Virus record (IMG/VR): IMGVR_UViG_3300044641_009805
Location: 124,001 to 188,000 of that record
Length of the DNA: 64,000 bases
Reading direction: 5' to 3' (one strand)
Numbering within the stretch: the stretch's first letter is position 1; each line of letters opens with the position of its first letter. The position numbers and the translations under genes were made by a program. Shown in pieces: positions 1 through 18,967 of this stretch. The notes under the pieces are model-generated. The model saw nothing but the letters and a program-made list of their open reading frames with translations, ran no database searches and had not been told where the DNA came from.

Positions 1-588
1 AAGATTCAATCTGGTTCTTTAAAACCTAAAGACGAACAAAAAGCAATAGAGAACATAAAAAAAATAAATGGAGCTTTTGCAGGATTTGCCGTGGCAATGA
101 AAAATATTCCAAAAGCAGGAATAGCAATAAAAGACTTCAAGAAAATATTAAAAAAAGAATTAGAAGACAGTAGAAATGATAATAGAACTTCTAAAAAAAT
201 GTCAGAGCTATTTCCAAATGATTATCAGAAATTTTCAGCAGCCTTAAGTTCTTCTTTTAAAACTAAGATTAGCGTTTATGATCCTGTAAAATTGGGAATT
301 CCTTGGGATACAAATGCTGTAGTTTCTGAATTCGTGAACATGCCTGTAAAAGCTTTAAATAGATTTACTGGTAAAGTTCAAGACAGCGAACCGCCTCCAA
401 CTCCTCCTGCACCGACACCACCAGGGTCTCCACCGACACCTGCCGCACCTGATGTGAAAATTAAAGATATTTTCAAAGGTGCAAATGAACAAGACATTAG
501 AAAGTTTAATGAAAAGTTTAAAGAAAAATTTGGATTTGAACTTTCTGATAAAGATGACCTAGCTGCAATACTTGCTAGTATGACATAA
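1..588 (+). CDS. Hypothetical protein, 5'-truncated, with a Pro/Thr-rich linker
   Basis: Frame 1 is open from base 1 (KIQSGSLKPK...) into the tracked ORF 91..588; contains PPPTPPAPTPPGSPPTP. Confidence 0.7.
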   Translation, partial: KIQSGSLKPKDEQKAIENIKKINGAFAGFAVAMKNIPKAGIAIKDFKKILKKELEDSRNDNRTSKKMSELFPNDYQKFSAALSSSFKTKISVYDPVKLGIPWDTNAVVSEFVNMPVKALNRFTGKVQDSEPPPTPPAPTPPGSPPTPAAPDVKIKDIFKGANEQDIRKFNEKFKEKFGFELSDKDDLAAILASMT

Positions 589-1768
589 TGACAGAGTTAT
601 GTATTACTGCACCTAATGAATTTAATTTTTCAAAAAACAATTTAGAATATAAGTTAGAAGAGACATAAGATCCGTAAAGCTTAGAATCATTTATCACTCC
701 AAATTCTATCATAGATTTTATTGATCTAAGACAATAATCAACAGATTGTCTTTTTACGACAAAATCGCTGGTATCTGGAAGTCTAATAATGACATTATTT
801 GCTGACAAAGATCTTATTCTATCTTCATAGATTTCTTCTACATTTTTTGATTCTTCTCTTTTAGATAATAGAAATTTAATATGAGAATTGACATCAGATT
901 TTGATGATTGATTTTTTATGCAAATTGAATTAACGTAAATAGAGATTTCATCTACTTTTCTTGCATCATCTATAGAAATATTAGAAATCAGTTGGCCTAA
1001 ATTGCTAGAAAACAAAGATGCAGAACAAGCTATTGAGATATCATTAAGTTTGTTTATTCCTTCCAGATTAAACTCAACTACAATAGGATAAACTTCAATA
1101 GCTCCTCTAATTCTATTGACTTTCAGTGTATTTAAAACTTCGTCATGAAGTCCTCTAGCTATTAGAATTACAGGGTGTTTTGTTGAACTTGCTCCTTCAA
1201 GCAATAAATTAATCTCAGAAACAGATTCAACAAATCCATCAATAACGATGACTCTAGGATTTACTATTTTTATTGGTTTTTCTTCAAAAGTTTTTACTTT
1301 AAAGGTAAAACCATCAATAGCTTCAATTGAAGTAAAGTTATTGCTAGACTTTTCTACAGATATTCTGCCACCAAACCCAGCTAAAAGCACAGCGTCAAAT
1401 AATAAGTTGCTTAACGTGTTATCGTCTTTTGTTTGAGAAAAAATGATTTTTTTTAGATCATTCAAAGTAGCCTTGTTTGAAGATCTGGTTTTATCATCAA
1501 GATTAGAGTTTAATATCCTGTGTAACGTAAAGTCAAACCCACCAGGAGATATTTTTTCTGATAAAATACAATGTTCTATAATCAACCTATGAATAGCTAA
1601 TTTCAGTTGATTAGAATATTTTAAATTAAAAATTCCTTGAAATGAAGTTTTTAACAAAACTTGATCTTTTTCAAGGAATAATACTTTTTCTGTATTTAAA
1701 AAATTTCTTAAATCATCGCATACTTCTTTAAATGATTCAAGTATTTCTTTTTTTAGAAAAATTGTCAC
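575..1768 (-). CDS. GroEL/Cpn60-like chaperonin, shortened and divergent
   Basis: Apical-domain-like segment PRVIVIDGFVESVSEINLLLE...HPVILIARGLHDEVLNTLKVNRIRG, plus LNDISIAC and YEDRIRSLS (cf. LQERLAKL). Only 397 aa, and no GDGTTT motif. Confidence 0.75.
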   Translation of the reverse strand: MTIFLKKEILESFKEVCDDLRNFLNTEKVLFLEKDQVLLKTSFQGIFNLKYSNQLKLAIHRLIIEHCILSEKISPGGFDFTLHRILNSNLDDKTRSSNKATLNDLKKIIFSQTKDDNTLSNLLFDAVLLAGFGGRISVEKSSNNFTSIEAIDGFTFKVKTFEEKPIKIVNPRVIVIDGFVESVSEINLLLEGASSTKHPVILIARGLHDEVLNTLKVNRIRGAIEVYPIVVEFNLEGINKLNDISIACSASLFSSNLGQLISNISIDDARKVDEISIYVNSICIKNQSSKSDVNSHIKFLLSKREESKNVEEIYEDRIRSLSANNVIIRLPDTSDFVVKRQSVDYCLRSIKSMIEFGVINDSKLYGSYVSSNLYSKLFFEKLNSLGAVIHNSVIMSY

Positions 1769-1774: not shown

Positions 1775-1803
1775 ATTGTAGCTTATTTTTGGCTAATGTT
1801 CAA
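1775..1803 (-). promoter_or_regulatory. Sigma70-type promoter, probably leaderless, for the GroEL-like gene
   Basis: Minus strand reads TTGAAC-17nt-TACAAT-6nt-GTG start. Confidence 0.65.
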
Positions 1804-2402
1804 ATAATTTGAATATGCGAATTAATGTAAGCATGTATTATCTTACCAATAGCACCTAAAATTGCTGTACCTACTGCAATTGAAAGCCATCTAGTAAAAG
1901 CTGCTTGTTTTTGATACCAAGATTGTAATTCTTTAATTACTTCAGAATGTTGATTTATAATCTTTGCAAGATTTTCATCATTTAGTTCTTCTTTTTGAGC
2001 TAGTTTTTCTTCATGAATTTTCCAGCTTTGTATCGAATGCAACTGTTCTTCTAACTCTTCAACTCTTTCAATTTCAGCTGTACTATTTTCAACATTCTTT
2101 ATTCTTGCATATAATCCATTATCAGGATTATACAAAACTTCTCTTATTTCGTCAACTTTAAAAACTAATTGAGTCTGTGATTGTTCTATTTTTTCAATTT
2201 TGTACATTAGATTTGAGAATCCACCATTCATTGCGGGAGCTGATAGGATTCTTTTTTGCATCTCTAAAATTTGTTGTCGATTGCTTTCAATAGCATCCAA
2301 AGTTTTTTTTGTTTCAACGTTATCAAGAGGATCTTTTTTGTCAATTTTTGCATCCGAAAAGTTCGGAGAACTTACTTGCGTATTAGTTTTTTTTCTTGAC
2401 AT
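1800..2402 (-). CDS. Coiled-coil protein with one C-terminal transmembrane helix (XhlA/holin-like topology)
   Basis: AGGAGG lies 6 nt before the ATG at 2402; heptad-rich body; WLSIAVGTAILGAIGKIIHAYI at the C-terminus. Confidence 0.6.
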   Translation of the reverse strand: MSRKKTNTQVSSPNFSDAKIDKKDPLDNVETKKTLDAIESNRQQILEMQKRILSAPAMNGGFSNLMYKIEKIEQSQTQLVFKVDEIREVLYNPDNGLYARIKNVENSTAEIERVEELEEQLHSIQSWKIHEEKLAQKEELNDENLAKIINQHSEVIKELQSWYQKQAAFTRWLSIAVGTAILGAIGKIIHAYINSHIQII

Positions 2403-2541
2403 ATACATCCTCCTAGACAATGTTATTTTTTCTAAGATTAAGATTTATAATTTACTAAATCTTATTTCTAAATCTATAAATTTAGATCAATTTACTTATA
2501 GAATTAATTATAATTCTTCAGAGAATTTAAAGAGGTAAATC

Positions 2542-4470
2542 TTGCAAACATTCAATAAAAGCATATTCGAAAATAGTTCTAGACCTCTCATCATTCCTGA
2601 TGAAGTTAAGGTTATTTTTGTAGCTGATCTCTTTTCAGAGGATTATGTCGGTGGAGCAGAACTAACCACGCAGGCTTTGATTGATGAGTGCCCTTTGCCT
2701 TACATGAAAATTCGTTCAAAAGAGCTGACCATGCACTTATTAGCTCAAGGAACTAATAAGTTTTGGATCTTTGGCAATTTTGCTCAAATGAACATGGAAC
2801 TAGTTCCAAGCATAATTGGAAATTTGAACTATTCTATCCTAGAATATGATTACAAATATTGCAAGTACAGATCTCCTGAAAAACATTCTGAAAAAACCGG
2901 ATCTCCGTGCGATTGTCATAATCAATTCAACGGAAAATTAATCTCTGCTTTTTACTACGGAGCAAAAGTTTTGTGGTGGATGTCAGAGGCGCAGAAAGAT
3001 CGTTATCACAGAATGTTCCCATTTTTATCTGAAAAAGATAATGTTGTCTTATCAAGCGTATTTTCGAAAAAAACCCTAGGTACCATCAAGTGGCTTAGAG
3101 AAGTTGTTTCTTCATCAGGATCAGATCGAAAAGGATGGGTAGTCTTAGGTTCAGAATCTTGGGTAAAAGGAGCTCAAGCTGCAGAAAAATGGTGCCTGGA
3201 CAACAAAGTAGAATATGAAGTTGTCTGGAATGTAGCTTACGAAGTCATGTTGGAAAAGCTAGCTAATGCAGAAGGGTTTGTATACCTTCCAGCAGGTGCT
3301 GATACCTGCCCAAGAATGGTCATAGAAGCGAAGCTTTTGGGTTGCAAACTTCATTTGAACGAAAACGTACAACATAAAAATGAAGATTGGTTCTCTACAA
3401 ATAACATTGAAGAGATTGAAGAGTACTTGTTTGGAGCACCAACTCTATTTTGGAATTACATAAAAAAGATGATGGAATATCGTCCTAACATCAGCGGATA
3501 CATGACGGTTTATAACGCATTGTCTCAAGAATATCCATTTATACAGTGCGTTAAGTCTATGCTTCCTTTTTGCGAGGAGGTTTGTATTGTTGATGGAGGT
3601 TCTACAGACGGCACTTGGGAGAAGCTTCAAGAATTGTCATCTACGGAAACAAAGATCAAACTGAAGCAAGTGACAAGAGATTGGAGCCATCCTAGATTTG
3701 CTGTTTTTGACGGAATGCAAAAAGCAGAAGCCCGTTCCATGTGCACAGGAGATTTTTGTTGGCAAATGGATTCAGATGAAATAGTGCACGAAGACGATTA
3801 TGAAAAAATATTAAACTTATGTGCAAAATTTCCAGCTAACGTAGATCTTATATCATTACCAGTTGTTGAATATTGGGGAGGTCCTAAGAAAGTTAGAGCC
3901 GACGTTCTTCCTTGGAAGTGGAGATTAAGTAAAAATAAGAAAAATATCACTCACGGAATACCTTCAGATGCTCGTCGAACTGATGAAAATGGAAATCTTT
4001 ATGCGGCTTATGGAGATGGATGTGACATGATAGATTCATCATCTTACGAAAGAATACCTCACGTAACTTTTTACACTTCTGAAGTTGACAGTGCAAGAAA
4101 GCAAGCAGTTTCCGGTGACGCTGAAGCAATAAAGAATTATCAAGAATGGTTCAACAAAGTCGTCGATAATTTGCCTGGAGTATTTCATTATAGCTGGTTT
4201 GATCTGCCCAGAAAGATTAAACTGTATAAGAAATATTGGACCAAACACTGGGAATCGTTGTCTGGAAAATCTTATGAAGATACTTCAGAATCAAATATGA
4301 TGTTTGATGTTCCTTGGTCACAAGTGACAGATGAAATGATAGAAGCTAGAGCTTCTGAACTCTCGGAAAAATTAGGCGGGTGGATTTGGCATCAAAAATG
4401 GGATGGTAAGACGAAAACTCATCATATAACGATAAGCAAATCTCAACCTAAAATTATGTTAGATAAATGA
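2542..4470 (+). CDS. Two-domain glycosyltransferase (GT-B/GT4-like N-half fused to GT2 C-half)
   Basis: N-half VGGAELTT...DTCPRMVIEAKLLGC; C-half YMTVYNA...IVDGGSTDGT...MDSDE; AGAGGT SD before a TTG start. Confidence 0.85.
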   Translation: MQTFNKSIFENSSRPLIIPDEVKVIFVADLFSEDYVGGAELTTQALIDECPLPYMKIRSKELTMHLLAQGTNKFWIFGNFAQMNMELVPSIIGNLNYSILEYDYKYCKYRSPEKHSEKTGSPCDCHNQFNGKLISAFYYGAKVLWWMSEAQKDRYHRMFPFLSEKDNVVLSSVFSKKTLGTIKWLREVVSSSGSDRKGWVVLGSESWVKGAQAAEKWCLDNKVEYEVVWNVAYEVMLEKLANAEGFVYLPAGADTCPRMVIEAKLLGCKLHLNENVQHKNEDWFSTNNIEEIEEYLFGAPTLFWNYIKKMMEYRPNISGYMTVYNALSQEYPFIQCVKSMLPFCEEVCIVDGGSTDGTWEKLQELSSTETKIKLKQVTRDWSHPRFAVFDGMQKAEARSMCTGDFCWQMDSDEIVHEDDYEKILNLCAKFPANVDLISLPVVEYWGGPKKVRADVLPWKWRLSKNKKNITHGIPSDARRTDENGNLYAAYGDGCDMIDSSSYERIPHVTFYTSEVDSARKQAVSGDAEAIKNYQEWFNKVVDNLPGVFHYSWFDLPRKIKLYKKYWTKHWESLSGKSYEDTSESNMMFDVPWSQVTDEMIEARASELSEKLGGWIWHQKWDGKTKTHHITISKSQPKIMLDK

Positions 4471-5189
4471 AAGGCGTAATATTAGCAGGTGGTACTGGAA
4501 GTCGTTTATATCCTTTAACAAAATCGACCAACAAATGTTTGCTTCCAATTGCAACCAAGCCGATGGTTTATCATGTTTTAGAATTGATGACTTCTTCAGG
4601 AATTGATGACATCATGTTGATCACAGGTCCTGAAAATGCAGGACAAGTCATGAATTTGTTGGGGTCAGGACTTGATTATTCCTGCTCTTTGACTTATAGA
4701 ATTCAAGATAAAGCTAACGGCATAGCAGCAGCAGTAAATCTTTGCAAGAGTTTTGTTGGAAACTCTAAATTTACCGTGTTATTAGGAGACAATATTTTTA
4801 GCGATTTTTCTAAACTAGCATCGCAAATTCGTGAGTTTTATTCATCGAAGGATGAATTTAGACTTTTCTTAAAAGAAGTAATAGACCCTCAAAGGTTCGG
4901 AGTACCAGTTTATCTTAATGATGAAGTTGTAGATATAATCGAAAAACCAAAATCTCCTCCTAGCAATAAAGCAATAGTGGGATTATACTGTTATTCTTCA
5001 AACGTCTTTGATGTGATTGAAGGTTTAAAGCCTTCTTCTCGCGGAGAATATGAGATATCGGAGTTAAATTCTTATCTAGTGAAAAATTGTAGTGGTAGCT
5101 TTTTTGATGTTGAATGTGAATGGGTAGACGCAGGAACTCATGAATCTTACAAAAAAGCTAATGAAATGATTTGGGAAACTTTAAAATGA
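4467..5189 (+). CDS. rmlA: Glucose-1-phosphate thymidylyltransferase
   Basis: MKGVILAGGTGSRLYPLT, LGDNIF, IIEKP, SRGEYEI, WVDAGT. Confidence 0.92.
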   Translation: MKGVILAGGTGSRLYPLTKSTNKCLLPIATKPMVYHVLELMTSSGIDDIMLITGPENAGQVMNLLGSGLDYSCSLTYRIQDKANGIAAAVNLCKSFVGNSKFTVLLGDNIFSDFSKLASQIREFYSSKDEFRLFLKEVIDPQRFGVPVYLNDEVVDIIEKPKSPPSNKAIVGLYCYSSNVFDVIEGLKPSSRGEYEISELNSYLVKNCSGSFFDVECEWVDAGTHESYKKANEMIWETLK

Positions 5190-6007
5190 AAGTAATCATC
5201 GGATCAGGGAAAGTAGCTAACATTATAAAAGATAAAGAAGACATTGTCTTGTCTCATTCGCAAATAGAGATTAAAGATGAAATGTCGATTGACTCGATTC
5301 TTTCTACATTTCCTGAAAAAACAGTAGTTGTAAACACTGCCGCTAAGATTAATCTAGAATGGTGCGAAGAGAACAAAAAAGAATCTGAACTAGTCAACGT
5401 AGTTGGTGCAGTAAACGTTGCAAAAATTTGCAAAAAATATCATCATCATCTATTACACGTTAGCAGCGGTTGCATTTTTGATGGAATGGAAACAGAAAAA
5501 GAGTATACTGAATTAGATGATCCATCACCAGCTTCTTGGTACGCACAAACTAAAGCAAATGCTGATATTTCGATCTTATCTTTGGGATATCAAAATATTA
5601 CGATAGTTCGACCTAGGCAGTTAATATCAGCTGTTCCTAATCCCACAAATATGTTAACTAAGTTTATGAATTTGCAAAAAGGCAATTTTATTGATTCAAA
5701 AAATTCTATTACTTGTATAGAAGATATGAAACTAATGATTGATCACCTGATTAGTAACAAATGTTATGGAGTCTATAATCTTGCAAACGTTGGTTGGATG
5801 AGCCCGTACCAAATAGCCAACAAAATAAAAGCTAAAATTTTTAGTGATTTTATCATCGATAAGATAAGCTACGATGATTATATAAAGAGTATAAAAGTAA
5901 AAAGAGTTAACACTTTACTAAGCGTAGACAAATTAATATCTACGGGATTTGTTCCCAGAAGTGCAGAGGAAGCTTTAGAATGGTGTTTAGAAAATTACGG
6001 GAATTAA
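5186..6007 (+). CDS. NDP-4-keto-6-deoxyglucose reductase of the RmlD superfamily, most like bifunctional 3,5-epimerase/4-reductase NRS/ER
   Basis: NLEWCE, SSGCIF, YAQTK (YxxxK), NPTNMLTK, NSITCIED; ATG at 5186 overlaps the rmlA stop (ATGA). Confidence 0.8.
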   Translation: MKVIIGSGKVANIIKDKEDIVLSHSQIEIKDEMSIDSILSTFPEKTVVVNTAAKINLEWCEENKKESELVNVVGAVNVAKICKKYHHHLLHVSSGCIFDGMETEKEYTELDDPSPASWYAQTKANADISILSLGYQNITIVRPRQLISAVPNPTNMLTKFMNLQKGNFIDSKNSITCIEDMKLMIDHLISNKCYGVYNLANVGWMSPYQIANKIKAKIFSDFIIDKISYDDYIKSIKVKRVNTLLSVDKLISTGFVPRSAEEALEWCLENYGN

Positions 6008-6008
6008 A

Positions 6009-6947
6009 ATGAAGGTAATCATTACAGGAGGAGCAGGATTTATTGGAGGTCATGCTGTTAGACATTTCTTAAGCTTAGGAGATTCTGTTCTTAACATAGA
6101 TAAACTTACTTACGCAAGCAAAAAAACTAACTTTGAAAATTCAAATTTTCTTCAGTTGGATATTTGCGAAACAGAGATTTTGATAGAACAAATCAAAAAA
6201 TACAATCCTGACTTTTTAATTCATTTTGCAGCAGAAACCCATGTAGATAATTCCATATTAGATTGTAATGATTTTATTCACTCCAACGTTAAAGGTGTTG
6301 CCTCAGTCTTAAATGCATGTAAAGCAACCGGTACAAAATTGTGTCACATTTCCACTGACGAAGTATATGGTCCAGCATATGATAGATCTTTTGTAGAAAG
6401 TGATCCATTAAATCCTTTAAATCCTTATTCAGCTACAAAAGCTTCAGGAGATTTGTTGATAAAATCTTATAAAAATACTTACGGGTCAGATTACATCATT
6501 GTTAGACCTTCTAACAACTACGGTCCAAATCAACATTCTGAAAAATTTATACCAAAGTTGATTGATTGCTTGAAAAAAGGTATTCAATTCCCTCTTTATG
6601 GAGATGGACGACAAGAAAGAGAATGGACATACGTAGAAGACACGGTAAAGTTAATAAGGATTTTGTTAACTTCTGAATCTGCAGAATGGAATTCTTGTTA
6701 TAATTTAAGTTCTGGAATGACATTCACAAATATAGAGACAGCTTCTCATGTGATAAAGACCTACAATCTTATTACAAATAACAATTTTGATATTTTTGAT
6801 GTGTTAAAAACATCAAAAGATAGACCCGGACATGACAAAAAGTATTGGATTTCTACAAAAAAGCTAAATTCTGTTGTAGATTTCAAATATATTGGATTTC
6901 AATCTGGGATAGAAAAGACAGTTTCTTCTTATGTCCAAGAACAATAG
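6009..6947 (+). CDS. rmlB: dTDP-glucose 4,6-dehydratase
   Basis: GGAGFIG, DKLTYA, HFAAETHVDNSI, ISTDEVYG, PYSATKA, NNYGPNQHSEKFIP, DRPGHDKKY. Confidence 0.95.
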   Translation: MKVIITGGAGFIGGHAVRHFLSLGDSVLNIDKLTYASKKTNFENSNFLQLDICETEILIEQIKKYNPDFLIHFAAETHVDNSILDCNDFIHSNVKGVASVLNACKATGTKLCHISTDEVYGPAYDRSFVESDPLNPLNPYSATKASGDLLIKSYKNTYGSDYIIVRPSNNYGPNQHSEKFIPKLIDCLKKGIQFPLYGDGRQEREWTYVEDTVKLIRILLTSESAEWNSCYNLSSGMTFTNIETASHVIKTYNLITNNNFDIFDVLKTSKDRPGHDKKYWISTKKLNSVVDFKYIGFQSGIEKTVSSYVQEQ

Positions 6948-7671
6948 ATTCGTTTTTGTATCACCCATGTATAATGCATCCGAAACCTTGCCTCGGATGC
7001 TTCATTCTATTTGTGGTCAATCTTATGATAATTGGCGAGTTATTTTGATCGATGATCTTTCTTCTGAAGAGCACGTCAAGAACTGCAAAAAAATACAAGA
7101 TGACTTTTCTTCAATGTTGGATCAATCCTACAAAAATAAAATTGAAGTTATATGGAACGTTGAAAAAAAATGGGAAGTTGCAAATGTCTTAATGGGAATC
7201 TCTAAATGCAATGATGATGACATTGTTTGTCGGATAGATGCTGACGATTGGTTAACAGATCTTGATGCATTAACGATTATCAATCATGCATATACTGAGA
7301 CAAATTGCGATGCATTGTGGACAGCGCATAGATGGAGTTTTTCTGATAAAAATATCAGCAGACCAATGCCAGATGATGCTGATGTATACGCTTATCCTTG
7401 GGTTTCAAGTCATTTAAAAACCTTTAGAAAAACTTTGATAAATGAAGTTAAAGATGAAAACTTTAGAGGTGAAGATGGAAACTATATTAGAAGAGCAGGT
7501 GATCAAGCGATATATCTACCAGTTCTTCACAAGTCTAAAAAGAGATTGTTTTTACCAAGAGTAATGTATCATTATACCATCAAAGATGTCCCTGAAACGT
7601 ATCAAACTGATGATGCTAGATTTCAAAAAGACGAAGCTATCTTTTTAAGAAAACGTGGGTTTGTAAAATGA
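6931..7671 (+). CDS. Glycosyltransferase family 2
   Basis: SPMYNA, ILIDDLS, RIDADDW (DxD motif). Confidence 0.88.
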   Translation: MSKNNRFVFVSPMYNASETLPRMLHSICGQSYDNWRVILIDDLSSEEHVKNCKKIQDDFSSMLDQSYKNKIEVIWNVEKKWEVANVLMGISKCNDDDIVCRIDADDWLTDLDALTIINHAYTETNCDALWTAHRWSFSDKNISRPMPDDADVYAYPWVSSHLKTFRKTLINEVKDENFRGEDGNYIRRAGDQAIYLPVLHKSKKRLFLPRVMYHYTIKDVPETYQTDDARFQKDEAIFLRKRGFVK

Positions 7672-8030
7672 AACAGCAAAATTTTCATGATTCTATCTCT
7701 AAACTATTGGTCGAAAGACTTTCAAAAAGAAAAAATCAAATTTTGAATAAAGCAACTTGCGTTGAGATTTATAATGATATATTTTTCACATTGTCTGAAG
7801 TGATAAAAACAGCTTCGACGCCTTTGTCAAATGAATCCGTGAATTTTTTAGCTCAAATGTACTATGACTCTATAAACATAAACGAGACTCAAGAATTAGA
7901 TCCTAACATCTTTACTCAAAGAGCTAGTTTAAAAAATATTGAAACTAAAGAAATCGCTTTAATGGCTGTCATGCTAAATGGCACTGAATTCGCTACGCCT
8001 TTCATTTCAGAGGTAAAACGAAGATCGTGA
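7668..8030 (+). CDS. Hypothetical protein
   Basis: 120-aa ORF translationally coupled to both neighbours; no recognised motif. Confidence 0.65.
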   Translation: MKQQNFHDSISKLLVERLSKRKNQILNKATCVEIYNDIFFTLSEVIKTASTPLSNESVNFLAQMYYDSININETQELDPNIFTQRASLKNIETKEIALMAVMLNGTEFATPFISEVKRRS

Positions 8031-8956
8031 AAATACATTTAGACAACGTGAATATGGGATCTAATTCAGGTCCAAATTCTTTTGCAAAGAGACTTGCAAA
8101 AGGCCTTATAGAATCCGGGCATGAGGTAGAAATTTATGATGGAAGAAATTCAGATGTTTCTTTGGTTTTTATTGAACCTAGTGGTAGACCCTTGGCAAAG
8201 AAAGTCATTCAAAGACTTGATGGAATTTGGTTTTCTCCATCTGAATTTCATGTAAAAAATGTTAACATAAAATCATTGTATCAAAAAGCCGATGGTGTGA
8301 TCTGGCAATCAGAATTTGATAAGAATATGGCATCAAAATGGTGGGGAATTCCAAAAAATGGAAAAATCATATTGAATGGCATAAATGCTGAACCCGTTAA
8401 ACAGTTTAAAATTTCTTCATTAGAACAAATTAGACAAAAGTATGAAATGCTTTTTGTCTGTTCAGCAAATTGGCACTCACAAAAAAGACTTGAATCTAAC
8501 GTTGAGTTATTCAAGCATTTACAAAGTTTTTATGGTTCAGCCGCGCTCATAGTGATGGGTTCAAATCCAAAAATGATTCCTGACGTAGACATATTCTACA
8601 CAGGACCTCAACCTCATGAAGTTTGTCTAGAAGTATTCTCTGCTTCAAATTGGATGATTCACCTTGCTTGGTTAGATCATTGTCCTAATACGGTGGTAGA
8701 ATCTTTATCTCAATTTACTCCTGTTATTTGTTCGGAGCAAGGAGGCACAAAAGAACTAGTTAAGAATTTTGGAGTGATTTTAAAAGAGAATCAACCATAT
8801 GATTACGAACTAGTCAACTATGATAATCCTCCAAAAATAGACGTGAGCCAAATAAAAGAAAAACTTCCAGACCTAAAAGACAAAAAGCCTGACACAGACG
8901 TCTCAATGAATAGAGTCATAAATGATTATCTAACATTTTTTAAAGAACTATTATGA
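8027..8956 (+). CDS. Glycosyltransferase, GT4-like
   Basis: SGPNSF, IILNGI, QKRLE, DHCPNTVVESLS...GGTKELV. Confidence 0.85.
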   Translation: MKIHLDNVNMGSNSGPNSFAKRLAKGLIESGHEVEIYDGRNSDVSLVFIEPSGRPLAKKVIQRLDGIWFSPSEFHVKNVNIKSLYQKADGVIWQSEFDKNMASKWWGIPKNGKIILNGINAEPVKQFKISSLEQIRQKYEMLFVCSANWHSQKRLESNVELFKHLQSFYGSAALIVMGSNPKMIPDVDIFYTGPQPHEVCLEVFSASNWMIHLAWLDHCPNTVVESLSQFTPVICSEQGGTKELVKNFGVILKENQPYDYELVNYDNPPKIDVSQIKEKLPDLKDKKPDTDVSMNRVINDYLTFFKELL

Positions 8957-9852
8957 AAATAGCCATAAATAGAAAGCCGATAGACGGACCTTGGGGCGGC
9001 GGAAACAATTTTGTTAGAGCAGTATATGCAACTGTTCCTTCTGGCATAACCATTACTAATAATCTGTCAGAAGATGTTGATTCCATATTTCTAATGGATC
9101 CTAGAAAAGAAAATGGAATGTTTGACGCAAATGACGTCTACAAATTTGTATCTTCTGTTAAAAAAATTCCAGTTGTTCAAAGAATCAATGAATGTGATGC
9201 TAGAAAAGGTACTGAACACATGGATAGTTTGCTCTTACAATGTAGCATCTTAAATACAAAAACAATTTTTGTTAGTAACTGGATGAAAGATTACTTCAAT
9301 AAAAAAGGGTGGAATTGTAAGAAACAATACGTTATGCACAACGGAGTAGATGACACTTTCATTGAAAATAGAAAGAACAACTCATATACTCGTTCAGATA
9401 ATAAACTCAAAGTAGTAACTCATCATTGGTCTAACAATTCTTTAAAGGGATTTGACGTATACGAGTTTATTGATTATTTGACCACGAAAGAAAGAAATAT
9501 TGAATTTACTTACATCGGAAGAGAAAGAGGTACCTTTAACAATACAAAAATAATTCCTCCAATTCACGGAGAAGAGTTAGCAAAAGAGTTAGCAAAACAT
9601 GATGTTTATATAAGTGGATCAAGACATGACCCAGGACCTAATCATGTTTTAGAATCTATTGCTGTAGGTTTGCCAACATACGTTCATGTTGAAGGTGGCG
9701 GATCTGTAGAATTCGCAGGCATAGATCATGTCTATAAGAATTTTTTTGAAATTGAAAAGTTGTTGCTTAGCAGAGATTTGAAGAATAATTCTTATGATAT
9801 TTTAAGATGGTCTGATTCAATGAAACATTTTTGGAATATAATTTTTCAATGA
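8953..9852 (+). CDS. Glycosyltransferase, GT4-like
   Basis: GPWGGGNNF, HNGVD, KGFD, DPGPNHVLESIAVGLP. Confidence 0.85.
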   Translation: MKIAINRKPIDGPWGGGNNFVRAVYATVPSGITITNNLSEDVDSIFLMDPRKENGMFDANDVYKFVSSVKKIPVVQRINECDARKGTEHMDSLLLQCSILNTKTIFVSNWMKDYFNKKGWNCKKQYVMHNGVDDTFIENRKNNSYTRSDNKLKVVTHHWSNNSLKGFDVYEFIDYLTTKERNIEFTYIGRERGTFNNTKIIPPIHGEELAKELAKHDVYISGSRHDPGPNHVLESIAVGLPTYVHVEGGGSVEFAGIDHVYKNFFEIEKLLLSRDLKNNSYDILRWSDSMKHFWNIIFQ

Positions 9853-10751
9853 ATAAGGTGTTTGTCTTACCTCCATCTGAGGATTGGATAGTCGATAGAT
9901 TTGTCAAAGAATGGAATGAAGATAATTCAGACATAAGTGTTAACCACCCAAAAGACGCAAATGTAGTTTGGTTATTAGCTGATTGGGCTTGGCAAAATCT
10001 GTATCAATCAGGTTGGTTAAACGGGAAAAAAGTTTTGACCACCGTTCACCACATTGTTCCTGAAAAATTTAATTCTTTAGCTTATCAAGAATTTATGTTT
10101 AGAGATAAGTTAACGACAGCATATCACGTTTACAACGAACAGACTAAAGACTTTATAAGTAGATTAACAAAAAAAGAAGTATTCGTGGTACCATATTGGG
10201 CAAATCAAAAGATATGGAAAGCAACTGGAAGTAAAAACGATTTAAGAAAAAAATATAATTTGCCGTTGAATTCATACTTGGTAGGATCTTTTCAAAGAGA
10301 CACGGAAGGATCTGATTTGATAAGTCCTAAATTAGAAAAAGGTCCAGATTTGCTGGCCGATTATCTAGAAAAAGTTGTTAAAAAGAATCCTGACTTGCAT
10401 GTTGTTTTGGCTGGATGGAGAAGACAGTATATAATCTCTAGACTAAAAAAATCTGGAATACCATTCACATACGTCGAGAGACCTCCTCATGATGTAATAA
10501 ACGAGTTGTATCAAACTCTTGATTTATATCCTGTGACAGCAAGATGTGAAGGAGGCCCTCAATCTTTGATAGAATGTGGACTATTAAATGTTCCAGTAAT
10601 TTCAAGAAACATAGGAATAGCTACGCAGGTTCTTCCTCTTCATTCTATTCATGACGATGTTAGTTTAGCTATTCCTTCAATTCCTGATGTTGAATCTTGG
10701 AAATTGCCACAAGGATATCAAGGATATCGAAATCTAATATCTGCCATGTAG
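9849..10751 (+). CDS. Glycosyltransferase, GT4-like
   Basis: EKGPD, EGGPQSLIECGLLNVPVIS (Ex7E); ATG at 9849 overlaps the previous stop. Confidence 0.85.
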   Translation: MNKVFVLPPSEDWIVDRFVKEWNEDNSDISVNHPKDANVVWLLADWAWQNLYQSGWLNGKKVLTTVHHIVPEKFNSLAYQEFMFRDKLTTAYHVYNEQTKDFISRLTKKEVFVVPYWANQKIWKATGSKNDLRKKYNLPLNSYLVGSFQRDTEGSDLISPKLEKGPDLLADYLEKVVKKNPDLHVVLAGWRRQYIISRLKKSGIPFTYVERPPHDVINELYQTLDLYPVTARCEGGPQSLIECGLLNVPVISRNIGIATQVLPLHSIHDDVSLAIPSIPDVESWKLPQGYQGYRNLISAM

Positions 10752-10765
10752 ATAAGGAGACAAAT

Positions 10766-11680
10766 ATGTCGATTACAATTGCAGTTACAACTTTTAATAG
10801 ACTAAAGTACGCTAAGTCTCTTTTTAAATCTTTAGAAAATGTAAAAAGCAATAATCAACTTATTGTTGTTGATAATTGTAGCACTGAAAAAGGTTTGCAA
10901 GATTATCTCTTTGATCTCAAGAAATCTAACTTGATAGACGATCTATTTTTGAGAGATCCTAAAGAAAGAAATTGGGTAAATGATGAATATGTTGCTAAGA
11001 ACATGATCATCGAGACTGCAAAAAATGACGTGATTTTATTTTTGCAAGATGATTTGCAGCTGATTGTTAATAATGAAGTTTTTGAAAAAACAGTTCAAGA
11101 TTTTATTAGCTTTGATGAGGCGAAAGCATTAGAAGTAAATGCTGTTAGAAACTCGACCGTATCTAACAGGTATGATGCCGATAACTGCGAAGTTTTTAAG
11201 CTCGAAAATTACAAATATTACAAACCGATAGACAATCATTTTCCCACAATGGGATTCTTCAAAAAAGAAGTTTTTGACTTAATTGGGAAATACCCAGTAG
11301 ATTGGCCTCAGACTCAAGATTATTGGGGAAGATCAGAAGACTGGTACGATAACGAAGTAAAATTAAAATTAAAAGATCAGATGAACTATTCTAGTTGGGT
11401 CCCTCTATTTGCTCCTGTGTGGAATGACCCTAGAGGAGGATATGCTTTCATTAGAGGTAATAAGAGGTATGGTTATTATTTAGACGCTCCATCTACTTCT
11501 GGTATGTACTATGAAAAATTGTCTGATGAACAGTATCAACAAAAACAAAATTCTAGGATTCCATTGGGGTTTACTGACGTTTGTAAATCAGATGGTTGGG
11601 AATACAAGGTGGTTAATAAAGACCAGGTAAAATATCCACAAAACAAAATTCTTTTAGAAGGACCTGAAGAGGAATTTTGA
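10766..11680 (+). CDS. Glycosyltransferase family 2
   Basis: AAGGAG SD; IAVTTFNR, IVVDNCS, FLQDD. Confidence 0.82.
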   Translation: MSITIAVTTFNRLKYAKSLFKSLENVKSNNQLIVVDNCSTEKGLQDYLFDLKKSNLIDDLFLRDPKERNWVNDEYVAKNMIIETAKNDVILFLQDDLQLIVNNEVFEKTVQDFISFDEAKALEVNAVRNSTVSNRYDADNCEVFKLENYKYYKPIDNHFPTMGFFKKEVFDLIGKYPVDWPQTQDYWGRSEDWYDNEVKLKLKDQMNYSSWVPLFAPVWNDPRGGYAFIRGNKRYGYYLDAPSTSGMYYEKLSDEQYQQKQNSRIPLGFTDVCKSDGWEYKVVNKDQVKYPQNKILLEGPEEEF

Positions 11681-12813
11681 TGAACGTTTTAATATTTCCT
11701 ACAGATGATAGAAGTGGACTAGCTTCTATGATCTACCACTATTCAAAATTGGGACATAAAGTTTTTGTTCCTAAAAAAGGAACGCTTGGTCTAAACTGGC
11801 AAAGAATAGCAACTTGGCCTGCTATGCTTTGTAAATCTTTTGAAGACAAAACAAAAAGAAATTTAGAAATTTATCCATTTGAAGAAAATCTTTCTTTTTT
11901 TGGAGAAGATTACTTTTTGAAAGATTTTAAATCTCATAATCTTTATGAAGAAGACATCTATTGTCAAATCATAGATTTGACAAAACAAAAATGTTCAATT
12001 GATGTATTCCACACCTTGCGAGGCGGCGAAAGTTCTTTACGCCAATATTTCAAAATAGCTTCAGAATATTTCCCAAATGCAAAATGGGTATCTTCAACAA
12101 TGAATGCTTGGGATAGTTCACCTGAAAATTACAAAACAAGAAACGCCGCTAAATTTATTCCTGCAAACTATGAAAATAAAAATACAGACGTAAACAATGT
12201 TAATGTCTTTTGTCTGCCATTCGAAAAGTCATTACTTGACATCACGAATGTCTCTATTTCAGGTTACGAAGATGTTTCTTTTGCTTCGTTTAACCACAAC
12301 TTTGAAGTAAGACAACCAGAAGACTATAAGATATTCAAGAAAATGAATTCCTTGCTTAGAGAAATCAATCTACCAGAAGTAATAAACTTCGGTGGAAACA
12401 TCCGTAGCGCAGGAGCTGACATTAGATATTCAAAAGAAAATGGCGTGACTGGTAAATTTCCTACAATCACGCCCAGACAATCTTACAAAATTACGTCTAG
12501 ATTAAAGGCAGCCGTTCATTTCAAGCAGACCGATTGGGGAGGTGGCGTTTTTTATTATTGCTTAAATTCTGGAACTCCCATCATTACGACCAATAGGTAC
12601 GTTAATTCTTCAAACGCTTCAAAGTATCTTATAGATAACATTAATTGTATTCTTGTCGATGATGCTTTAAAAGCATCAAATTCAATTGAAAAATTGTTAT
12701 TTGATGATTCTTACGTTAATAAATTAAGAAATGGAATGTTAGAACTTCAAAAAGAGATTCTTAATAATTCTTATTGGAAAAAGTGGGAAAATTTTATTGG
12801 AGAACTAACATGA
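11680..12813 (+). CDS. Putative GT-B glycosyltransferase
   Basis: C-terminal DWGGGVFYYCLNSGTPIIT...LIDNINCILVDD resembles the GT4 nucleotide-binding region; operon context. Confidence 0.55.
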   Translation: MNVLIFPTDDRSGLASMIYHYSKLGHKVFVPKKGTLGLNWQRIATWPAMLCKSFEDKTKRNLEIYPFEENLSFFGEDYFLKDFKSHNLYEEDIYCQIIDLTKQKCSIDVFHTLRGGESSLRQYFKIASEYFPNAKWVSSTMNAWDSSPENYKTRNAAKFIPANYENKNTDVNNVNVFCLPFEKSLLDITNVSISGYEDVSFASFNHNFEVRQPEDYKIFKKMNSLLREINLPEVINFGGNIRSAGADIRYSKENGVTGKFPTITPRQSYKITSRLKAAVHFKQTDWGGGVFYYCLNSGTPIITTNRYVNSSNASKYLIDNINCILVDDALKASNSIEKLLFDDSYVNKLRNGMLELQKEILNNSYWKKWENFIGELT

Positions 12814-13637
12814 AAGATACTTTATTTCTTTTGGTCACTTGTACGAAAGATGTGACTAGATTTGAGATACTAAAACAAGTTGTTGATAATCTAGTTCATG
12901 TAATTGATAAAAAAACGTTAGATGATTTGTTGGTATTTGATAATGCTTCTTCTTACGAAGGCAGCGTAAAATTATTGACAGACAATTTTGTTAACGTTTA
13001 CCAATCAAAAACCAACATTGGACTTTGGAGCGCAATACATTGGTGCTTAAAAAATTACCAATCTTTGATGAAAAGAGACTACAAATATCTTTACATTATC
13101 GAGTCAGACTTAATTCATTCCAATGACACTCTAAAAAAATTAGAAACATGTGAATCATTTTTAGAATCTAACAGTGAAGTAGGATTTATAAGGACAGAAG
13201 AATTTTTAGTTTCACAAAGACATTTGTACGATAAAGGAAGCCCAAAAAAAGATTCAAGAAAATACGCCTGGGTAACTCAAAATAACTTTATCCAAAACAA
13301 AAGAGTAGAGTTTTTTCAGTCAGATTGTGACGGTATGTATAAATGCAATTTTTTGGCAAAACTACCAGCCCTCAGCAGAATTCAAACTATGAAAGAAGTT
13401 TTTTTAGATCTTTCTAACTTAAAAAAGTTCAATGAGACTGATTATCAAAAGTTGTACTATCAAAGATATAAAATTTCAGCTGTCTTAGACGGAGGCATAT
13501 TTCATTCTAAGTTAGGAAATGAAAATACGGATGTAGTCATCAACGGCAGCAGGAATTACAACCTTAGCATTGATTACAGACCGACTAGATCTGATTCAAT
13601 AACTGAAATTTCTTTAGACGATGTTGTTAAACTTTGA
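12810..13637 (+). CDS. Putative GT2-like glycosyltransferase
   Basis: LVFDNASS, NIGL, YIIESD. Confidence 0.65.
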   Translation: MKDTLFLLVTCTKDVTRFEILKQVVDNLVHVIDKKTLDDLLVFDNASSYEGSVKLLTDNFVNVYQSKTNIGLWSAIHWCLKNYQSLMKRDYKYLYIIESDLIHSNDTLKKLETCESFLESNSEVGFIRTEEFLVSQRHLYDKGSPKKDSRKYAWVTQNNFIQNKRVEFFQSDCDGMYKCNFLAKLPALSRIQTMKEVFLDLSNLKKFNETDYQKLYYQRYKISAVLDGGIFHSKLGNENTDVVINGSRNYNLSIDYRPTRSDSITEISLDDVVKL

Positions 13638-13662
13638 ACAGTTTTTTTCGTGAAAGTATAAT
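13634..13662 (+). promoter_or_regulatory. Sigma70-type promoter, probably leaderless
   Basis: TTGAAC-17nt-TATAAT-7nt-ATG(13670); no SD. Confidence 0.7.
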
Positions 13663-13669
13663 TTGAACG

Positions 13670-14695: not shown

Positions 14696-14696
14696 T

Positions 14697-15839: not shown

Positions 15840-16362
15840 AGCTAAAGAATTAACACATCAAAAATTCTCATTAAGAGAAGTTTGCGATGATGATCATCTT
15901 TGGTTAGTAGAACTTCATAACGATCCTGAAGTTTTGAAAAACTTAACTAATCCTCAACCTATTACTTTAGAATCTCACTTAAATTGGTGGAATTCTTTGA
16001 ATAAAGAAAAAGAAAAAAGATACGTTTTTTGTGTTAATGAAGAAAAAGTAGGATTTTGCAAAATCTATTCAATAGATCGTAATAACAAAAATTGTTTATT
16101 AGGAGCAGATATACACAAAGACTATAGAGGAAAAGGGTTAGCAAAGCACATGTGGCAATTAATGCTTCATGTTTGTTTTAATGAGTTAAGTCTACACAGG
16201 GTTTCTTTAACCACAGCATCCTATAATTTGATAGGACAAAGAGTTTACAAAAATCTAGGATTCAAAGAAGAAGGTAGACAAATTGAATCGTTGTACAGAG
16301 AAGAAAAATATCATGATTCTATATGCATGTATTTGTTAAAACAAGACTGGAATAACAAATGA
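15826..16362 (+). CDS. GNAT N-acetyltransferase (PseH/RimL-like)
   Basis: ITLESHLNWW, YRGKGLA, VYKNLGFKEEG. Confidence 0.88.
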   Translation: MSTVEAKELTHQKFSLREVCDDDHLWLVELHNDPEVLKNLTNPQPITLESHLNWWNSLNKEKEKRYVFCVNEEKVGFCKIYSIDRNNKNCLLGADIHKDYRGKGLAKHMWQLMLHVCFNELSLHRVSLTTASYNLIGQRVYKNLGFKEEGRQIESLYREEKYHDSICMYLLKQDWNNK

Positions 16363-17965: not shown

Positions 17966-17967
17966 TC

Positions 17968-17996
17968 TTGATCATTTTTTTATTTTTTCTTATAAT
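17968..17996 (+). promoter_or_regulatory. Sigma70-type promoter, probably leaderless
   Basis: TTGATC-17nt-TATAAT-6nt-ATG(18003); no SD. Confidence 0.7.
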
Positions 17997-18002
17997 CTTT
18001 GT

Positions 18003-18935: not shown

Positions 18936-18939
18936 ACTA

Positions 18940-18963
18940 ATAAGGTAATGTAAATTACCTTAT
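18940..18963. promoter_or_regulatory. Perfect 10-bp inverted repeat overlapping the putative promoter of the nuclease gene
   Basis: ATAAGGTAAT-gtaa-ATTACCTTAT, lying within TTGAAC-18nt-TACCTT-6nt-ATG(18968). Confidence 0.5.
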
Positions 18964-18967
18964 AACA

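What the first reader, a model, noticed from the sequence alone, without database searches (positions are those of the whole stretch)
575..1768. GroEL-like protein lacking the ATPase signature
Seen: 397 aa against roughly 545 for GroEL. The apical and intermediate regions are recognisable, but GDGTTT is replaced by SPGGFDFT, and the N-terminal TLGPKG and most of the C-terminal equatorial part are missing. The frame is intact and has a good promoter. Known: characterised phage chaperonins (EL gp146, OBP gp246, AR9 gp228) are ATPases. Inference: an ATP-independent holdase, a non-catalytic subunit of a hetero-ring, or a modulator of host GroEL.
Basis: partly seen in the sequence, partly recalled or inferred. 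Interest (0 to 1): 0.65.

Follow-up and report, generated by a model that had tools for sequence, protein, structure and literature searches.

The report
ATPase-less short GroEL paralogue, jumbo phage
A jumbo phage known only from metagenomes carries, besides a normal GroEL chaperonin, a conserved 397-residue GroEL copy that keeps the client-binding apical domain but has lost the whole ATP pocket, so it cannot work as any characterised chaperonin does.

Summary
Window 575-1768 (minus strand) is an intact 397-aa ORF that is truly GroEL-related: PHROG groEL E 1e-21, hhalign probability 99.5%. An AlphaFold model (pLDDT 89.7) superposes end to end on GroEL (Z 24.5).

It is a GroEL with a minimised equatorial domain. 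The TLGP loop, about 30 residues around helices D/E, about 80 residues matching E. coli 413-492, and the C-terminal tail are missing. Every nucleotide-site residue is replaced across the family (D87 to Pro, D52 to Leu/Phe/Ile, D398 to Tyr or variable).

It is not decaying:
- 74 protein clusters of 370-464 aa, down to 27% identity
- fixed gene order in 38 viral contigs
- dN/dS 0.13
- strongest conservation in the apical domain

All four related genome records that are at least 74% complete also carry a full-length, motif-intact GroEL. No Cpn10 was found in this genome.

I read it as a selected, ATP-independent, apical-domain-centred binding protein (holdase or adaptor) in the phage's chaperone set. 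Whether it forms its own ring, joins the phage GroEL or acts on host GroEL/GroES is open. I found no cultured-phage member and no description in the literature.

The parts
575..1768 (-). Short GroEL paralogue ('sGroEL') CDS, 397 aa plus stop (stop codon 575-577); GTG start at 1766-1768
   Evidence: ORF list and translation. The same 397-aa gene was called independently on 7 contigs from at least 4 samples. GroEL homology. Fold.
1484..1768 (-). Residues 1-95: remnant of the N-terminal equatorial half. In the model it holds a strand, helix A, a stem-loop hairpin, helices B and C, and a shortened helix D. It lacks the TLGP loop and about 30 residues around helices D/E.
   Evidence: Secondary structure of the model. 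Model 1-395 superposes on GroEL 4-529. Collinear global hhalign. This is the least conserved part of the family: 3 of 95 columns at 80% or more.
1532..1549 (-). S74-P75-G76-G77-F78-D79, in the place of GroEL G86-D87-G88-T89-T90-T91 (phosphate/Mg loop). Family consensus AEKxSPGGF, with E71 invariant.
   Evidence: Sequence read directly. Alignment and column counts: position 75 is P in 48, A in 10 and never D in 63 sequences.
1313..1483 (-). Residues 96-152: first intermediate-domain segment (GroEL about 134-190)
   Evidence: hhalign and HMM alignments.
800..1312 (-). Residues 153-323: apical domain (GroEL 191-374) and the most conserved part. Family motifs are DG[FY][IV]ESVSE and RG..D[DE]VLNTLKVN..RG.
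   Evidence: Apical-domain crystal structures match at Z 22-24, rmsd 1.8-2.3 A over 171-179 residues. 33 of 171 columns are at least 80% conserved. Site-by-site table.
701..799 (-). Residues 324-356: second intermediate segment with helix M. D344 (61 of 63) aligns with E397, variable Y345 aligns with catalytic D398, and R348 is invariant at the H401 position.
578..700 (-). Residues 357-397: remnant of the C-terminal equatorial half. It starts at invariant G357 (hinge G410), followed by one helix and one strand that align with GroEL's last helix and C-terminal strand. About 80 residues (E. coli about 413-492) and the Gly-Met tail are absent.
   Evidence: Model secondary structure, structural range, weak but collinear hhalign of the C-terminal piece (E 0.02).
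1800..2420 (-). Upstream co-oriented gene (206 aa). By my reading of the sequence it is a coiled coil with a C-terminal hydrophobic anchor. It lies 31 nt from the sGroEL start and probably shares its transcript.
   Evidence: ORF and translation. It is the neighbour in 29 of 38 related loci. No family hit.
1..588 (+). 3' part of a convergent 274-aa gene that overlaps the sGroEL stop by 14 nt. It sits in a variable slot of an otherwise fixed gene array.
   Evidence: Present only in the two closest loci, L004 and L005. Other loci carry unrelated genes or none here.
2542..4470 (+). Divergently transcribed 642-aa family-2 glycosyltransferase that bounds the conserved array on this side
   Evidence: PF00535 E 4.6e-10. 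Neighbour in 31 of 38 loci.

Best explanation
The gene encodes a functional, ancient GroEL (group I Cpn60) paralogue, which I call sGroEL. It belongs to a lineage of roughly 270-310 kb tailed phages known only from metagenomes.

It keeps the apical and intermediate domains and a minimal equatorial stub: the N- and C-terminal strands, the stem-loop hairpin, helices A-C, a shortened helix D and the last helix.

It has lost the nucleotide pocket, the helices that make GroEL's ring-to-ring contacts, both partners of the R197-E386 allosteric salt bridge, and the Gly-Met tail. It therefore cannot run an ATP-driven folding cycle or form a GroEL-type double ring.

Selection acts mainly on the apical domain, whose helix H/I groove is kept but remodelled in a conserved way:
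- N265, T261 and R268 are invariant or nearly so.
- L237, L259 and V264 stay hydrophobic.
- L234 becomes His/Asn, V263 becomes Lys/Arg, E252 becomes Arg.

Most likely it works as an ATP-independent binding module, a holdase or adaptor for particular clients rather than a promiscuous foldase. It would act beside the phage's own full-length, motif-intact GroEL, which is present in every near-complete genome of the lineage.

Shown: homology, fold, deletions, loss of ATP-site residues, conservation, purifying selection, synteny, co-occurrence.
Inferred: ATP independence, apical-domain binding as the function, and cooperation with the phage GroEL.
For: Homology and fold:
- PHROG, NCBIfam, PDB and hhalign matches.
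- AlphaFold2 model at pLDDT 89.7.
- Foldseek E 1e-26 to GroEL, and VIA-align Z 24.5, rmsd 3.7 A over 394 residues spanning GroEL 4-529.

Loss of the ATP site family-wide:
- T30-P33 deleted.
- D52 to L/F/I.
- D87 to P (48 of 63) or A (10).
- T89-T91 to G/F/D.
- D398 to Y or variable.
- G414-416 not kept.

Real and selected:
- 74 clusters of 370-464 aa down to 27% identity.
- 38 viral contigs with the fixed order cc206 > sGroEL > p80 > p171 > p82 > ClpP > helicase > Hc1-like > p139 > PhoH.
- dN/dS 0.13 against an 88%-identical relative.
- Monophyletic with SH-aLRT 100.
- The identical protein occurs on 7 contigs from several samples.

Function centred on the apical domain: 33 of 171 apical columns are at least 80% conserved, against 3 of 95 and 2 of 41 in the equatorial remnants.

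Partner GroEL: a full-length GroEL with TLGP and GDGTTT intact occurs in G000 (84% complete), G004 (100%), G011 (91%), G012 (74%) and G003 (60%).
Against: - No biochemical or expression data exist.
- The oligomeric state is unknown.
- Four of the nine classic polypeptide-binding positions are deleted or polar (Y199 and S201 deleted, L234 to H/N, V263 to K/R). General holdase activity may therefore be weak, and the ligand could be a specific peptide or even something other than a protein.
- Co-occurrence with the full-length GroEL rests on five genomes. The two genes lie 87-145 kb apart, so there is no operon link.
- The N- and C-terminal equivalences rest on a predicted structure, not on significant sequence similarity.
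Confidence: 0.5

Rival explanations
1. Non-catalytic subunit or fixed partner of a hetero-oligomeric chaperonin built with the phage's own full-length GroEL. It would either insert into the ring through the retained N- and C-terminal strands and stem loop, or dock onto the ring. Chloroplast Cpn60 alpha/beta and CCT also mix subunit types.
For: - Both genes are present in every genome record that is at least 74% complete, plus one at 60%.
- The elements that form GroEL's intra-ring beta-sheet are the equatorial parts that survive in the model. That these elements make the ring contacts is established GroEL knowledge.
- No Cpn10 was found in the genome. The conserved gene in the groES position is not a Cpn10 fold. 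The phage GroEL may therefore need a different helper.
Against: - The genes are 87-145 kb apart.
- sGroEL diverges about twice as fast as the full-length GroEL between the same genomes (43% against 70% identity, and 32% against 57%).
- The equatorial remnants, which would carry the interface, are the least conserved parts.
- There is no direct test.
Confidence: 0.2
2. Modulator or decoy of the host chaperonin system. The conserved helix H/I groove would capture the host GroES mobile loop, or host GroEL clients, and redirect host folding capacity towards phage proteins.
For: - Helix-I residues equivalent to T261, N265 and R268 are invariant or nearly so, more strictly than in the phage's own GroEL, which has G and K at two of them. 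I recall these residues lying at the GroES-loop site, but did not check that here.
- The model adopts the GroES-bound, raised-apical conformation: rmsd 3.7-4.3 A to cis-ring subunits against 11-12 A to apo GroEL.
Against: - The host is unknown. The closest bacterial GroELs to the phage's full-length copy are scattered over phyla at 41-49% identity.
- L234 and V263, which are needed for GroES binding in E. coli (prior knowledge), are polar here.
- The conformation of a predicted model is weak evidence.
Confidence: 0.12
3. Stand-alone homo-oligomeric single ring: a passive cage or platform locked in an open, ATP-state-like conformation by conserved polar residues in the vestigial pocket (E71, Q44, D344, R348).
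For: - Ring-forming elements are retained while the inter-ring contact helices are lost.
- The conserved polar residues all lie at or near positions that align with GroEL nucleotide-site residues.
- The model is in the raised-apical state.
Against: - There is no evidence on oligomerisation.
- The equatorial remnants are poorly conserved.
- The proposed salt-bridge network was not measured, because no coordinates were available to me.
Confidence: 0.13
4. Decaying or non-functional GroEL remnant, or an assembly or annotation artefact.
For: - It is shorter than GroEL.
- Pfam Cpn60_TCP1 does not detect it.
- Its G+C is low, 27.8% against 42.6% for the genome.
Against: - Length, deletions and motifs are conserved across 74 clusters.
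- dN/dS is 0.13.
- The gene order is fixed in 38 contigs.
- The identical gene appears in independent assemblies.
- The fold prediction is confident.
- The low G+C is shared by the surrounding 40 kb.
Confidence: 0.02

Closest known systems
GroEL / Hsp60 (group I chaperonin, Pfam PF00118 Cpn60_TCP1)
   Same: Same three-domain fold from N- to C-terminus (Z 24.5). There is clear sequence homology over the intermediate and apical domains. Hinge glycines G192 and G410 are conserved, as is the helix-I motif with N265, T261 and R268.
   Different: - About 150 residues shorter.
- No TLGP loop, no GDGTTT, no catalytic Asp, no GGG 414-416.
- The stretch matching E. coli 413-492 and the Gly-Met tail are absent.
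- It scores below the Pfam and NCBIfam thresholds.
- The conservation pattern is inverted: the apical domain is more conserved than the equatorial remnants.
- R197 is hydrophobic, E386 is deleted and hinge G375 is Asn.
Characterised phage chaperonins (phiEL gp146, OBP gp246, AR9 gp228)
   Same: These are phage-encoded GroEL homologues of jumbo phages that work without a Cpn10 (PMC7185714, PMC9598537). Structurally, EL gp146 matches the model at Z 21.
   Different: Those proteins are full length (about 550 aa) and are ATPases with an ATP-driven conformational cycle (PMC7185714). The counterpart of those proteins in this phage is its separate 540-aa GroEL at G000:C1:37428-38942, not the short protein.
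Engineered GroEL 'minichaperones' (apical-domain fragments, about 191-345/376)
   Same: They are ATP-independent and rely on the apical domain alone. Their crystal structures (1kid, 1fy9, 1la1, 3vz6) superpose on residues about 126-323 at Z 22, rmsd 1.9-2.4 A. They are the nearest functional analogy for an ATP-free GroEL derivative. Their chaperone activity is prior knowledge and was not tested here.
   Different: They are laboratory constructs, monomeric, and keep the wild-type hydrophobic groove. sGroEL is a natural protein that also keeps the intermediate domain and an equatorial stub, and its groove is partly polar.
Divergent bacterial GroEL paralogues (chlamydial GroEL2/GroEL3, NCBIfam NF038370/NF038369)
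   Same: They are extra GroEL copies that exist beside a canonical one. There are weak HMM matches, E 1e-8 to 1e-10.
   Different: They are full-length proteins (profiles of 506-533 positions). sGroEL scores 33-40 bits against cut-offs of 600, so it is not a member.

Membership tests
Group I chaperonin (GroEL/Cpn60) | Cpn60 three-domain fold (equatorial, intermediate, apical; chain runs out and back) | tested here: met
   AlphaFold2 model at pLDDT 89.7. Foldseek E 2.8e-26. VIA-align Z 24.5, rmsd 3.7 A, 394 residues, model 1-395 on GroEL 4-529.
Group I chaperonin (GroEL/Cpn60) | Sequence scores above the curated family thresholds (Pfam PF00118; NCBIfam GroEL equivalog TIGR02348) | tested here: not met
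   No Pfam hit even at E up to 1. A six-frame PF00118 search of related genomes does not pick it up. TIGR02348 scores 60.8 bits against a cut-off of 582.
Group I chaperonin (GroEL/Cpn60) | Nucleotide-binding and hydrolysis residues: TLGP 30-33, D52, GDGTTT 86-91, D398, GGG 414-416 | tested here: not met
   All are deleted or replaced in the 63-sequence family, and none has Asp at the D87 position. Alignments.
Group I chaperonin (GroEL/Cpn60) | Complete equatorial domain with the inter-ring contact helices (helix D end with K105/A109; helices bearing E434, R452, E461-V464) | tested here: not met
   Helix D is cut to 11 residues. About 30 residues are missing after it, and about 80 residues (E. 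coli about 413-492) are missing from the C-terminal half. Which residues make the contacts comes from established GroEL structures.
Group I chaperonin (GroEL/Cpn60) | Hydrophobic polypeptide- and GroES-binding groove of apical helices H/I (Y199, S201, Y203, F204, L234, L237, L259, V263, V264) | tested here: inconclusive
   L237, L259 and V264 are kept hydrophobic. Y203 and F204 are partly hydrophobic. Y199 and S201 are deleted. L234 is H/N and V263 is K/R, each conserved as such.
Group I chaperonin (GroEL/Cpn60) | Heptameric ring assembly | not testable with these tools
   This needs SEC-MALS, native MS or cryo-EM. The strands and stem loop that form the intra-ring sheet in GroEL are present in the model, but that is not a test.
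Group I chaperonin (GroEL/Cpn60) | Cpn10 (GroES) co-chaperonin partner | tested here: not met
   No PF00166 match at E up to 1 in the 278-kb record, which is 84% complete. The control search hit 12 of 14 reference genomes. The host's GroES cannot be examined.
Group I chaperonin (GroEL/Cpn60) | ATPase activity and ATP-dependent folding | not testable with these tools
   This is a biochemical assay. The sequence predicts no ATPase.
Phage full-length chaperonins (EL gp146 type) | Full-length (about 550 aa) subunit with an intact ATP site, working without a co-chaperonin | tested here: not met
   sGroEL has 397 aa and no ATP site. The phage's other GroEL, 540 aa with TLGPNG and AGDGTTT, is the copy with the full length and intact ATP-site motifs.

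The most novel reading that the evidence does not exclude
sGroEL is the ATP-free half of a two-component phage chaperonin. In this reading it is a ring or cap frozen in the raised-apical, 'GroES-bound-like' state by a conserved polar network in the dead nucleotide pocket. It would work with the phage's full-length GroEL, which has no Cpn10, and take over the role of lid or client-delivery adaptor. That would be a third way, besides GroES and built-in lids, of closing or feeding a chaperonin cage.
Probability: 0.12. Interest if true: 0.85.

Novelty: new variant of a known kind. Interest (0 to 1): 0.6.

Why it matters
As far as I know, and in the papers these searches returned, every characterised Cpn60, cellular or viral, is an ATP-driven machine, and its equatorial ATPase domain is its most conserved part.

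Here a natural, widely conserved lineage has done the opposite. It discarded the ATP pocket and the ring-to-ring contacts and kept the apical domain under selection, always beside a canonical GroEL.

If it is active, it shows what a GroEL scaffold can do without nucleotide. It is a natural counterpart of the engineered minichaperones. It also gives a handle on how very large phages organise their own proteostasis: this genome also carries GroEL, ClpP and IF-1.

In addition, it is a small, well-predicted target for structural work and for designing ATP-independent chaperone modules.

Tried and rejected
1. Complex prediction of two copies of the protein: no verdict. It is not evidence either way on oligomerisation.
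3. Promoter scan: hits equal the shuffled expectation, so the 'good promoter' is rejected as evidence.
4. Hidden co-chaperonin next to either GroEL gene:
- PF00166 is absent.
- The conserved ~100-aa gene in the groES position upstream of the full-length GroEL folds as two helices plus a hairpin, not a Cpn10 barrel.
- p80, p82 and p171 next to sGroEL have no family hits. By my reading of the sequences, p80 and p82 look helical and p171 has paired-Cys motifs like a zinc ribbon. The Atlas look-up of p171 gave nothing usable.
5. Origin by recent duplication of the phage GroEL: the tree shows sGroEL as one clade on a branch of about 4 substitutions per site, joined to an unresolved polytomy of phage and bacterial GroELs. 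The tool flags long-branch attraction. The donor is undetermined.
6. Host clue from the full-length GroEL: the nearest bacterial GroELs are 41-49% identical and spread over many phyla. The 56% hit, a 'Bdellovibrionota MAG' contig, nests inside the phage clade and is probably a mis-binned phage contig.
7. Functional link to ClpP: ClpP lies three genes downstream in most loci but is missing from the array in the distant loci L037-L039 and L041, which still have sGroEL. The link is not obligatory.
8. Cultured relatives: tblastn of two family members against 50,697 GenBank phage records found only full-length GroELs or nothing.
9. Literature: five full-text searches and two papers searched for key terms mention no short or ATPase-less phage GroEL.
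10. The large representative-protein search was not run. The operators flagged it as costly, and no claim here rests on the absence of relatives.
Full report
**What is there**

Window 575-1768 holds a 397-codon ORF on the minus strand. It starts with GTG. An in-frame TGA two codons upstream excludes a longer form, and 60 or so relatives start at the same position with 'MSVFL...'.

The window is bases 124001-188000 of a 278,435-bp IMG/VR virus record estimated to be 84% complete. The window encodes tail-sheath-like and baseplate-like proteins. This is therefore a very large tailed phage with contractile-tail genes, with no cultured relative in the collections searched.

**It is GroEL-related, but below family thresholds**

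- Pfam's Cpn60_TCP1 model does not see it.
- PHROG 5725 'chaperonin groEL' matches at E 1.3e-21.
- NCBIfam GroEL models match at E 1e-17 to 1e-18, far below their cut-offs.
- PDB GroEL/Hsp60 chains match at E 1e-14, over residues about 95-361 against GroEL about 134-413.
- A profile of the family aligns to the phage's own full-length GroEL with 99.5% probability over residues 101-366.

**Fold**

An AlphaFold2 model built from a 63-sequence alignment has mean pLDDT 89.7.

- Foldseek finds GroEL at E 1e-26.
- VIA-align superposes model residues 1-395 on GroEL residues 4-529 at Z 24.5, rmsd 3.7 A, 394 residues.

The protein therefore spans GroEL from its first strand to its last, with internal deletions.

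The best superpositions are on GroES-bound cis-ring subunits (4v4o, 5opx, 1aon chain A, Hsp60 'football' complexes; rmsd 3.7-4.3 A). Apo GroEL gives 11-12 A. So the model has its apical domain raised. That is a property of a prediction and is only suggestive.

**What has been lost**

I combined the model's secondary structure, the collinear global profile alignment, the alignment of the C-terminal piece and the site table.

Equatorial elements that survive:
- the N-terminal strand
- helix A
- the stem-loop hairpin
- helices B and C
- an 11-residue stump of helix D
- the last helix
- the C-terminal strand

Elements that are missing:
- the T30-L31-G32-P33 loop
- about 30 residues around helices D/E
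- about 80 residues equivalent to E. coli 413-492
- the Gly-Met tail

By established GroEL structure, the two large deletions remove half of the nucleotide pocket and both sets of ring-to-ring contacts.

Across the 63 sequences:

| GroEL site | In the sGroEL family |
|---|---|
| D87 | Pro in 48, Ala in 10, never Asp |
| D52 | Leu, Phe or Ile |
| D398 (catalytic) | Tyr or variable; the neighbouring D344 (aligned to E397) is kept in 61 of 63 |
| G414-G416 | not kept |
| R197 | hydrophobic |
| E386 | deleted |

R197 and E386 are the two partners of the allosteric salt bridge.

One caveat applies. The N- and C-terminal pieces have no significant sequence similarity on their own (E 0.16 and 0.02). 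Their assignment rests on collinearity and on the predicted structure.

**It is a selected gene, not a remnant**

- A word-indexed search of 5.8 billion proteins returned 74 clusters, nearly all of 370-464 aa, down to 27% identity. None has a Pfam domain, apart from one 540-aa true GroEL at the bottom of the list.
- 38 IMG/VR viral contigs carry a relative.
- In these contigs the gene sits in a fixed, co-oriented array: 206-aa coiled-coil protein > sGroEL > (variable slot) > p80 > p171 > p82 > ClpP (PF00574, E 4.5e-38) > helicase > Hc1-like protein > p139 > PhoH. A divergent family-2 glycosyltransferase lies on the other side.
- Against the 88%-identical relative, dN/dS is 0.13. That is within the range of its neighbours, 0.00 to 0.23.
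- The identical protein is found on seven contigs from several independent assemblies.
- In a maximum-likelihood tree the short proteins form one clade (SH-aLRT 100). A branch of about 4 substitutions per site separates them from all full-length GroELs. Where that branch attaches is unresolved. The short form arose once and long ago, and its donor is unknown.

**Where selection acts**

Conservation is inverted relative to what I know of canonical GroEL:

| Region | Columns at least 80% conserved |
|---|---|
| Apical domain | 33 of 171 |
| N-terminal equatorial remnant | 3 of 95 |
| C-terminal equatorial remnant | 2 of 41 |

The apical helix-I motif is nearly fixed as VLNTLKVN..RG. N265 is invariant, and T261 and R268 are conserved in 62 of 63. 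L237, L259 and V264 stay hydrophobic.

Other classic binding positions are changed in a conserved way:
- L234 is His or Asn.
- V263 is Lys or Arg.
- E252-D253 is Arg-Gly.
- Y199 and S201 are deleted.

This looks like a groove retuned for a particular ligand rather than a general sticky patch.

The few conserved residues in the stub (Q44, invariant E71, G76), together with D344 and invariant R348 on helix M, all lie at or near positions that align with GroEL nucleotide-site residues. I suspect they tie the intermediate domain down in place of Mg-ATP, but I could not measure this.

**A full-length GroEL in the same genomes**

The same phage record encodes a 540-aa GroEL with TLGPNG and AGDGTTT intact, at G000:C1:37428-38942. 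That is 87 kb from the short gene.

Records that hold both genes:

| Record | Completeness |
|---|---|
| G000 | 84% |
| G004 | 100%, terminal repeats |
| G011 | 91% |
| G012 | 74% |
| G003 | 60% |

Records with only one of the two genes are 29-65% complete, so they say nothing.

No Cpn10 is detectable in the window's genome. The conserved ~100-aa gene sitting where groES would be, immediately upstream of the full-length GroEL, is predicted as two helices and a hairpin, not a Cpn10 barrel.

**Interpretation**

The protein cannot bind or hydrolyse ATP the way GroEL does, and it cannot make GroEL's back-to-back double ring. What is preserved and selected is the apical domain on its intermediate-domain stalk.

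The most economical reading is an ATP-independent binding protein, a holdase or adaptor, that belongs to the phage's own proteostasis set. That set includes a full-length GroEL, ClpP and an IF-1 homologue.

Three questions remain open:
- Does it assemble by itself through the retained strands and stem loop?
- Does it enter or dock on the phage GroEL?
- Does it engage host GroES or GroEL?

The one complex prediction I ran gave no verdict. I do not count it for or against binding.

**Comparison with what is known**

It is a homologue of group I chaperonins by fold and sequence. It fails the defining tests of the family as a machine: ATP site, complete equatorial domain, curated HMM thresholds.

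The characterised phage chaperonins (EL gp146, AR9 gp228) are full-length ATPases (PMC7185714, PMC9598537). Their equivalent in this phage is the other gene.

The nearest functional analogy is the engineered apical-domain minichaperone.

I found no member in 50,697 GenBank phage records. Five full-text searches and two papers searched for key terms turned up no description. The ESM Atlas holds an all-viral cluster of 388-aa 'hypothetical proteins' with the same shape. Some IMG entries label members simply 'chaperonin GroEL'.

**Verdict**

ATP independence is well founded on sequence and predicted structure, but the specific role is undetermined.

This is a new variant of a known kind. It should interest chaperonin and jumbo-phage researchers, and it is readily testable in vitro.

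Noticed in passing
G000:C1:37428-38942 (= L001:1408-3030), outside the window: This is a full-length 540-aa phage GroEL with intact TLGP and GDGTTT. In about 20 related contigs it is flanked by the same small genes: a ~100-aa gene directly upstream, where groES would sit, and a 65-85-aa gene directly downstream that looks beta-rich to me. The upstream protein is predicted as two helices plus a hairpin (pLDDT 73), not Cpn10. The function of both is unknown.
   Followed up: partly
L001:3790-4041 (G000:C1 about 39717-39968): The phage encodes a translation initiation factor IF-1 homologue (PF01176, E 9.6e-20), conserved a few genes downstream of the full-length GroEL in related contigs (cluster c2).
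   Followed up: partly
window 53649-56684, 56737-59808, 60011-63076 (+): Three tandem genes encode proteins of about 1,010-1,020 aa. Two of them have weak tail-sheath domain matches at their C-terminal ends (PF04984, PF17482). They may be triplicated, enlarged sheath-like proteins, but I did not compare the three with each other.
   Followed up: no
G000 whole record; window region about 1-24000: G+C content is strongly uneven along the 278-kb record: 32-34% over about 108-148 kb, which includes the sGroEL gene at 27.8%, against 52-61% over about 48-80 kb. This could reflect mosaic origin or a chimeric assembly. Co-occurrence of the two GroEL genes does not depend on this record alone.
   Followed up: partly
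L044:12161-12397 (-) (G000:C1:120158-120397): A 79-aa protein matches the chlamydial histone H1-like protein Hc1 (PF07432, E 1.6e-10). It is conserved in the array downstream of the helicase in at least 17 loci.
   Followed up: no
L044:14142-14789 (-) (G000:C1:122139-122789): The phage encodes a ClpP protease (PF00574, E 4.5e-38) three genes downstream of sGroEL in 31 of 38 loci. PHROGs labels it a head maturation protease. I did not look for a partner unfoldase.
   Followed up: partly
L039:5121-9588, L041:5365-9771, L032:5525-9938: In the most distant sGroEL-bearing contigs, a conserved trio of genes (about 390, 440 and 645 aa) precedes sGroEL on the same strand. They match phrog_19072/phrog_10856 'sporulation protein', phrog_35217 and phrog_22605. 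This resembles the bacterial SpoVR, DUF444 and PrkA set, but that resemblance is from memory and was not tested.
   Followed up: no
ESM Atlas cluster, row 3: A 232-aa bacterial 'hypothetical protein' cluster (54 members, Actinomycetota) matches only the apical domain of the model, residues 127-345, with TM 0.84 by the row. It may be a natural stand-alone GroEL apical-domain protein.
   Followed up: no
L084 (JBBAUR010000009.1, 'Bdellovibrionota MAG', 89-kb contig): Its GroEL nests inside the phage full-length GroEL clade, at 56% identity to the window genome's copy. The contig is probably a phage contig binned into a bacterial MAG.
   Followed up: no
window 2542-22248 (+): This is a long run of co-oriented genes. 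It starts with a family-2 glycosyltransferase, an NTP-transferase (nucleotidyl-transferase) gene and what looks to me like an epimerase/reductase. It suggests a large sugar-modification cluster next to the sGroEL array and is partly conserved in related contigs.
   Followed up: no
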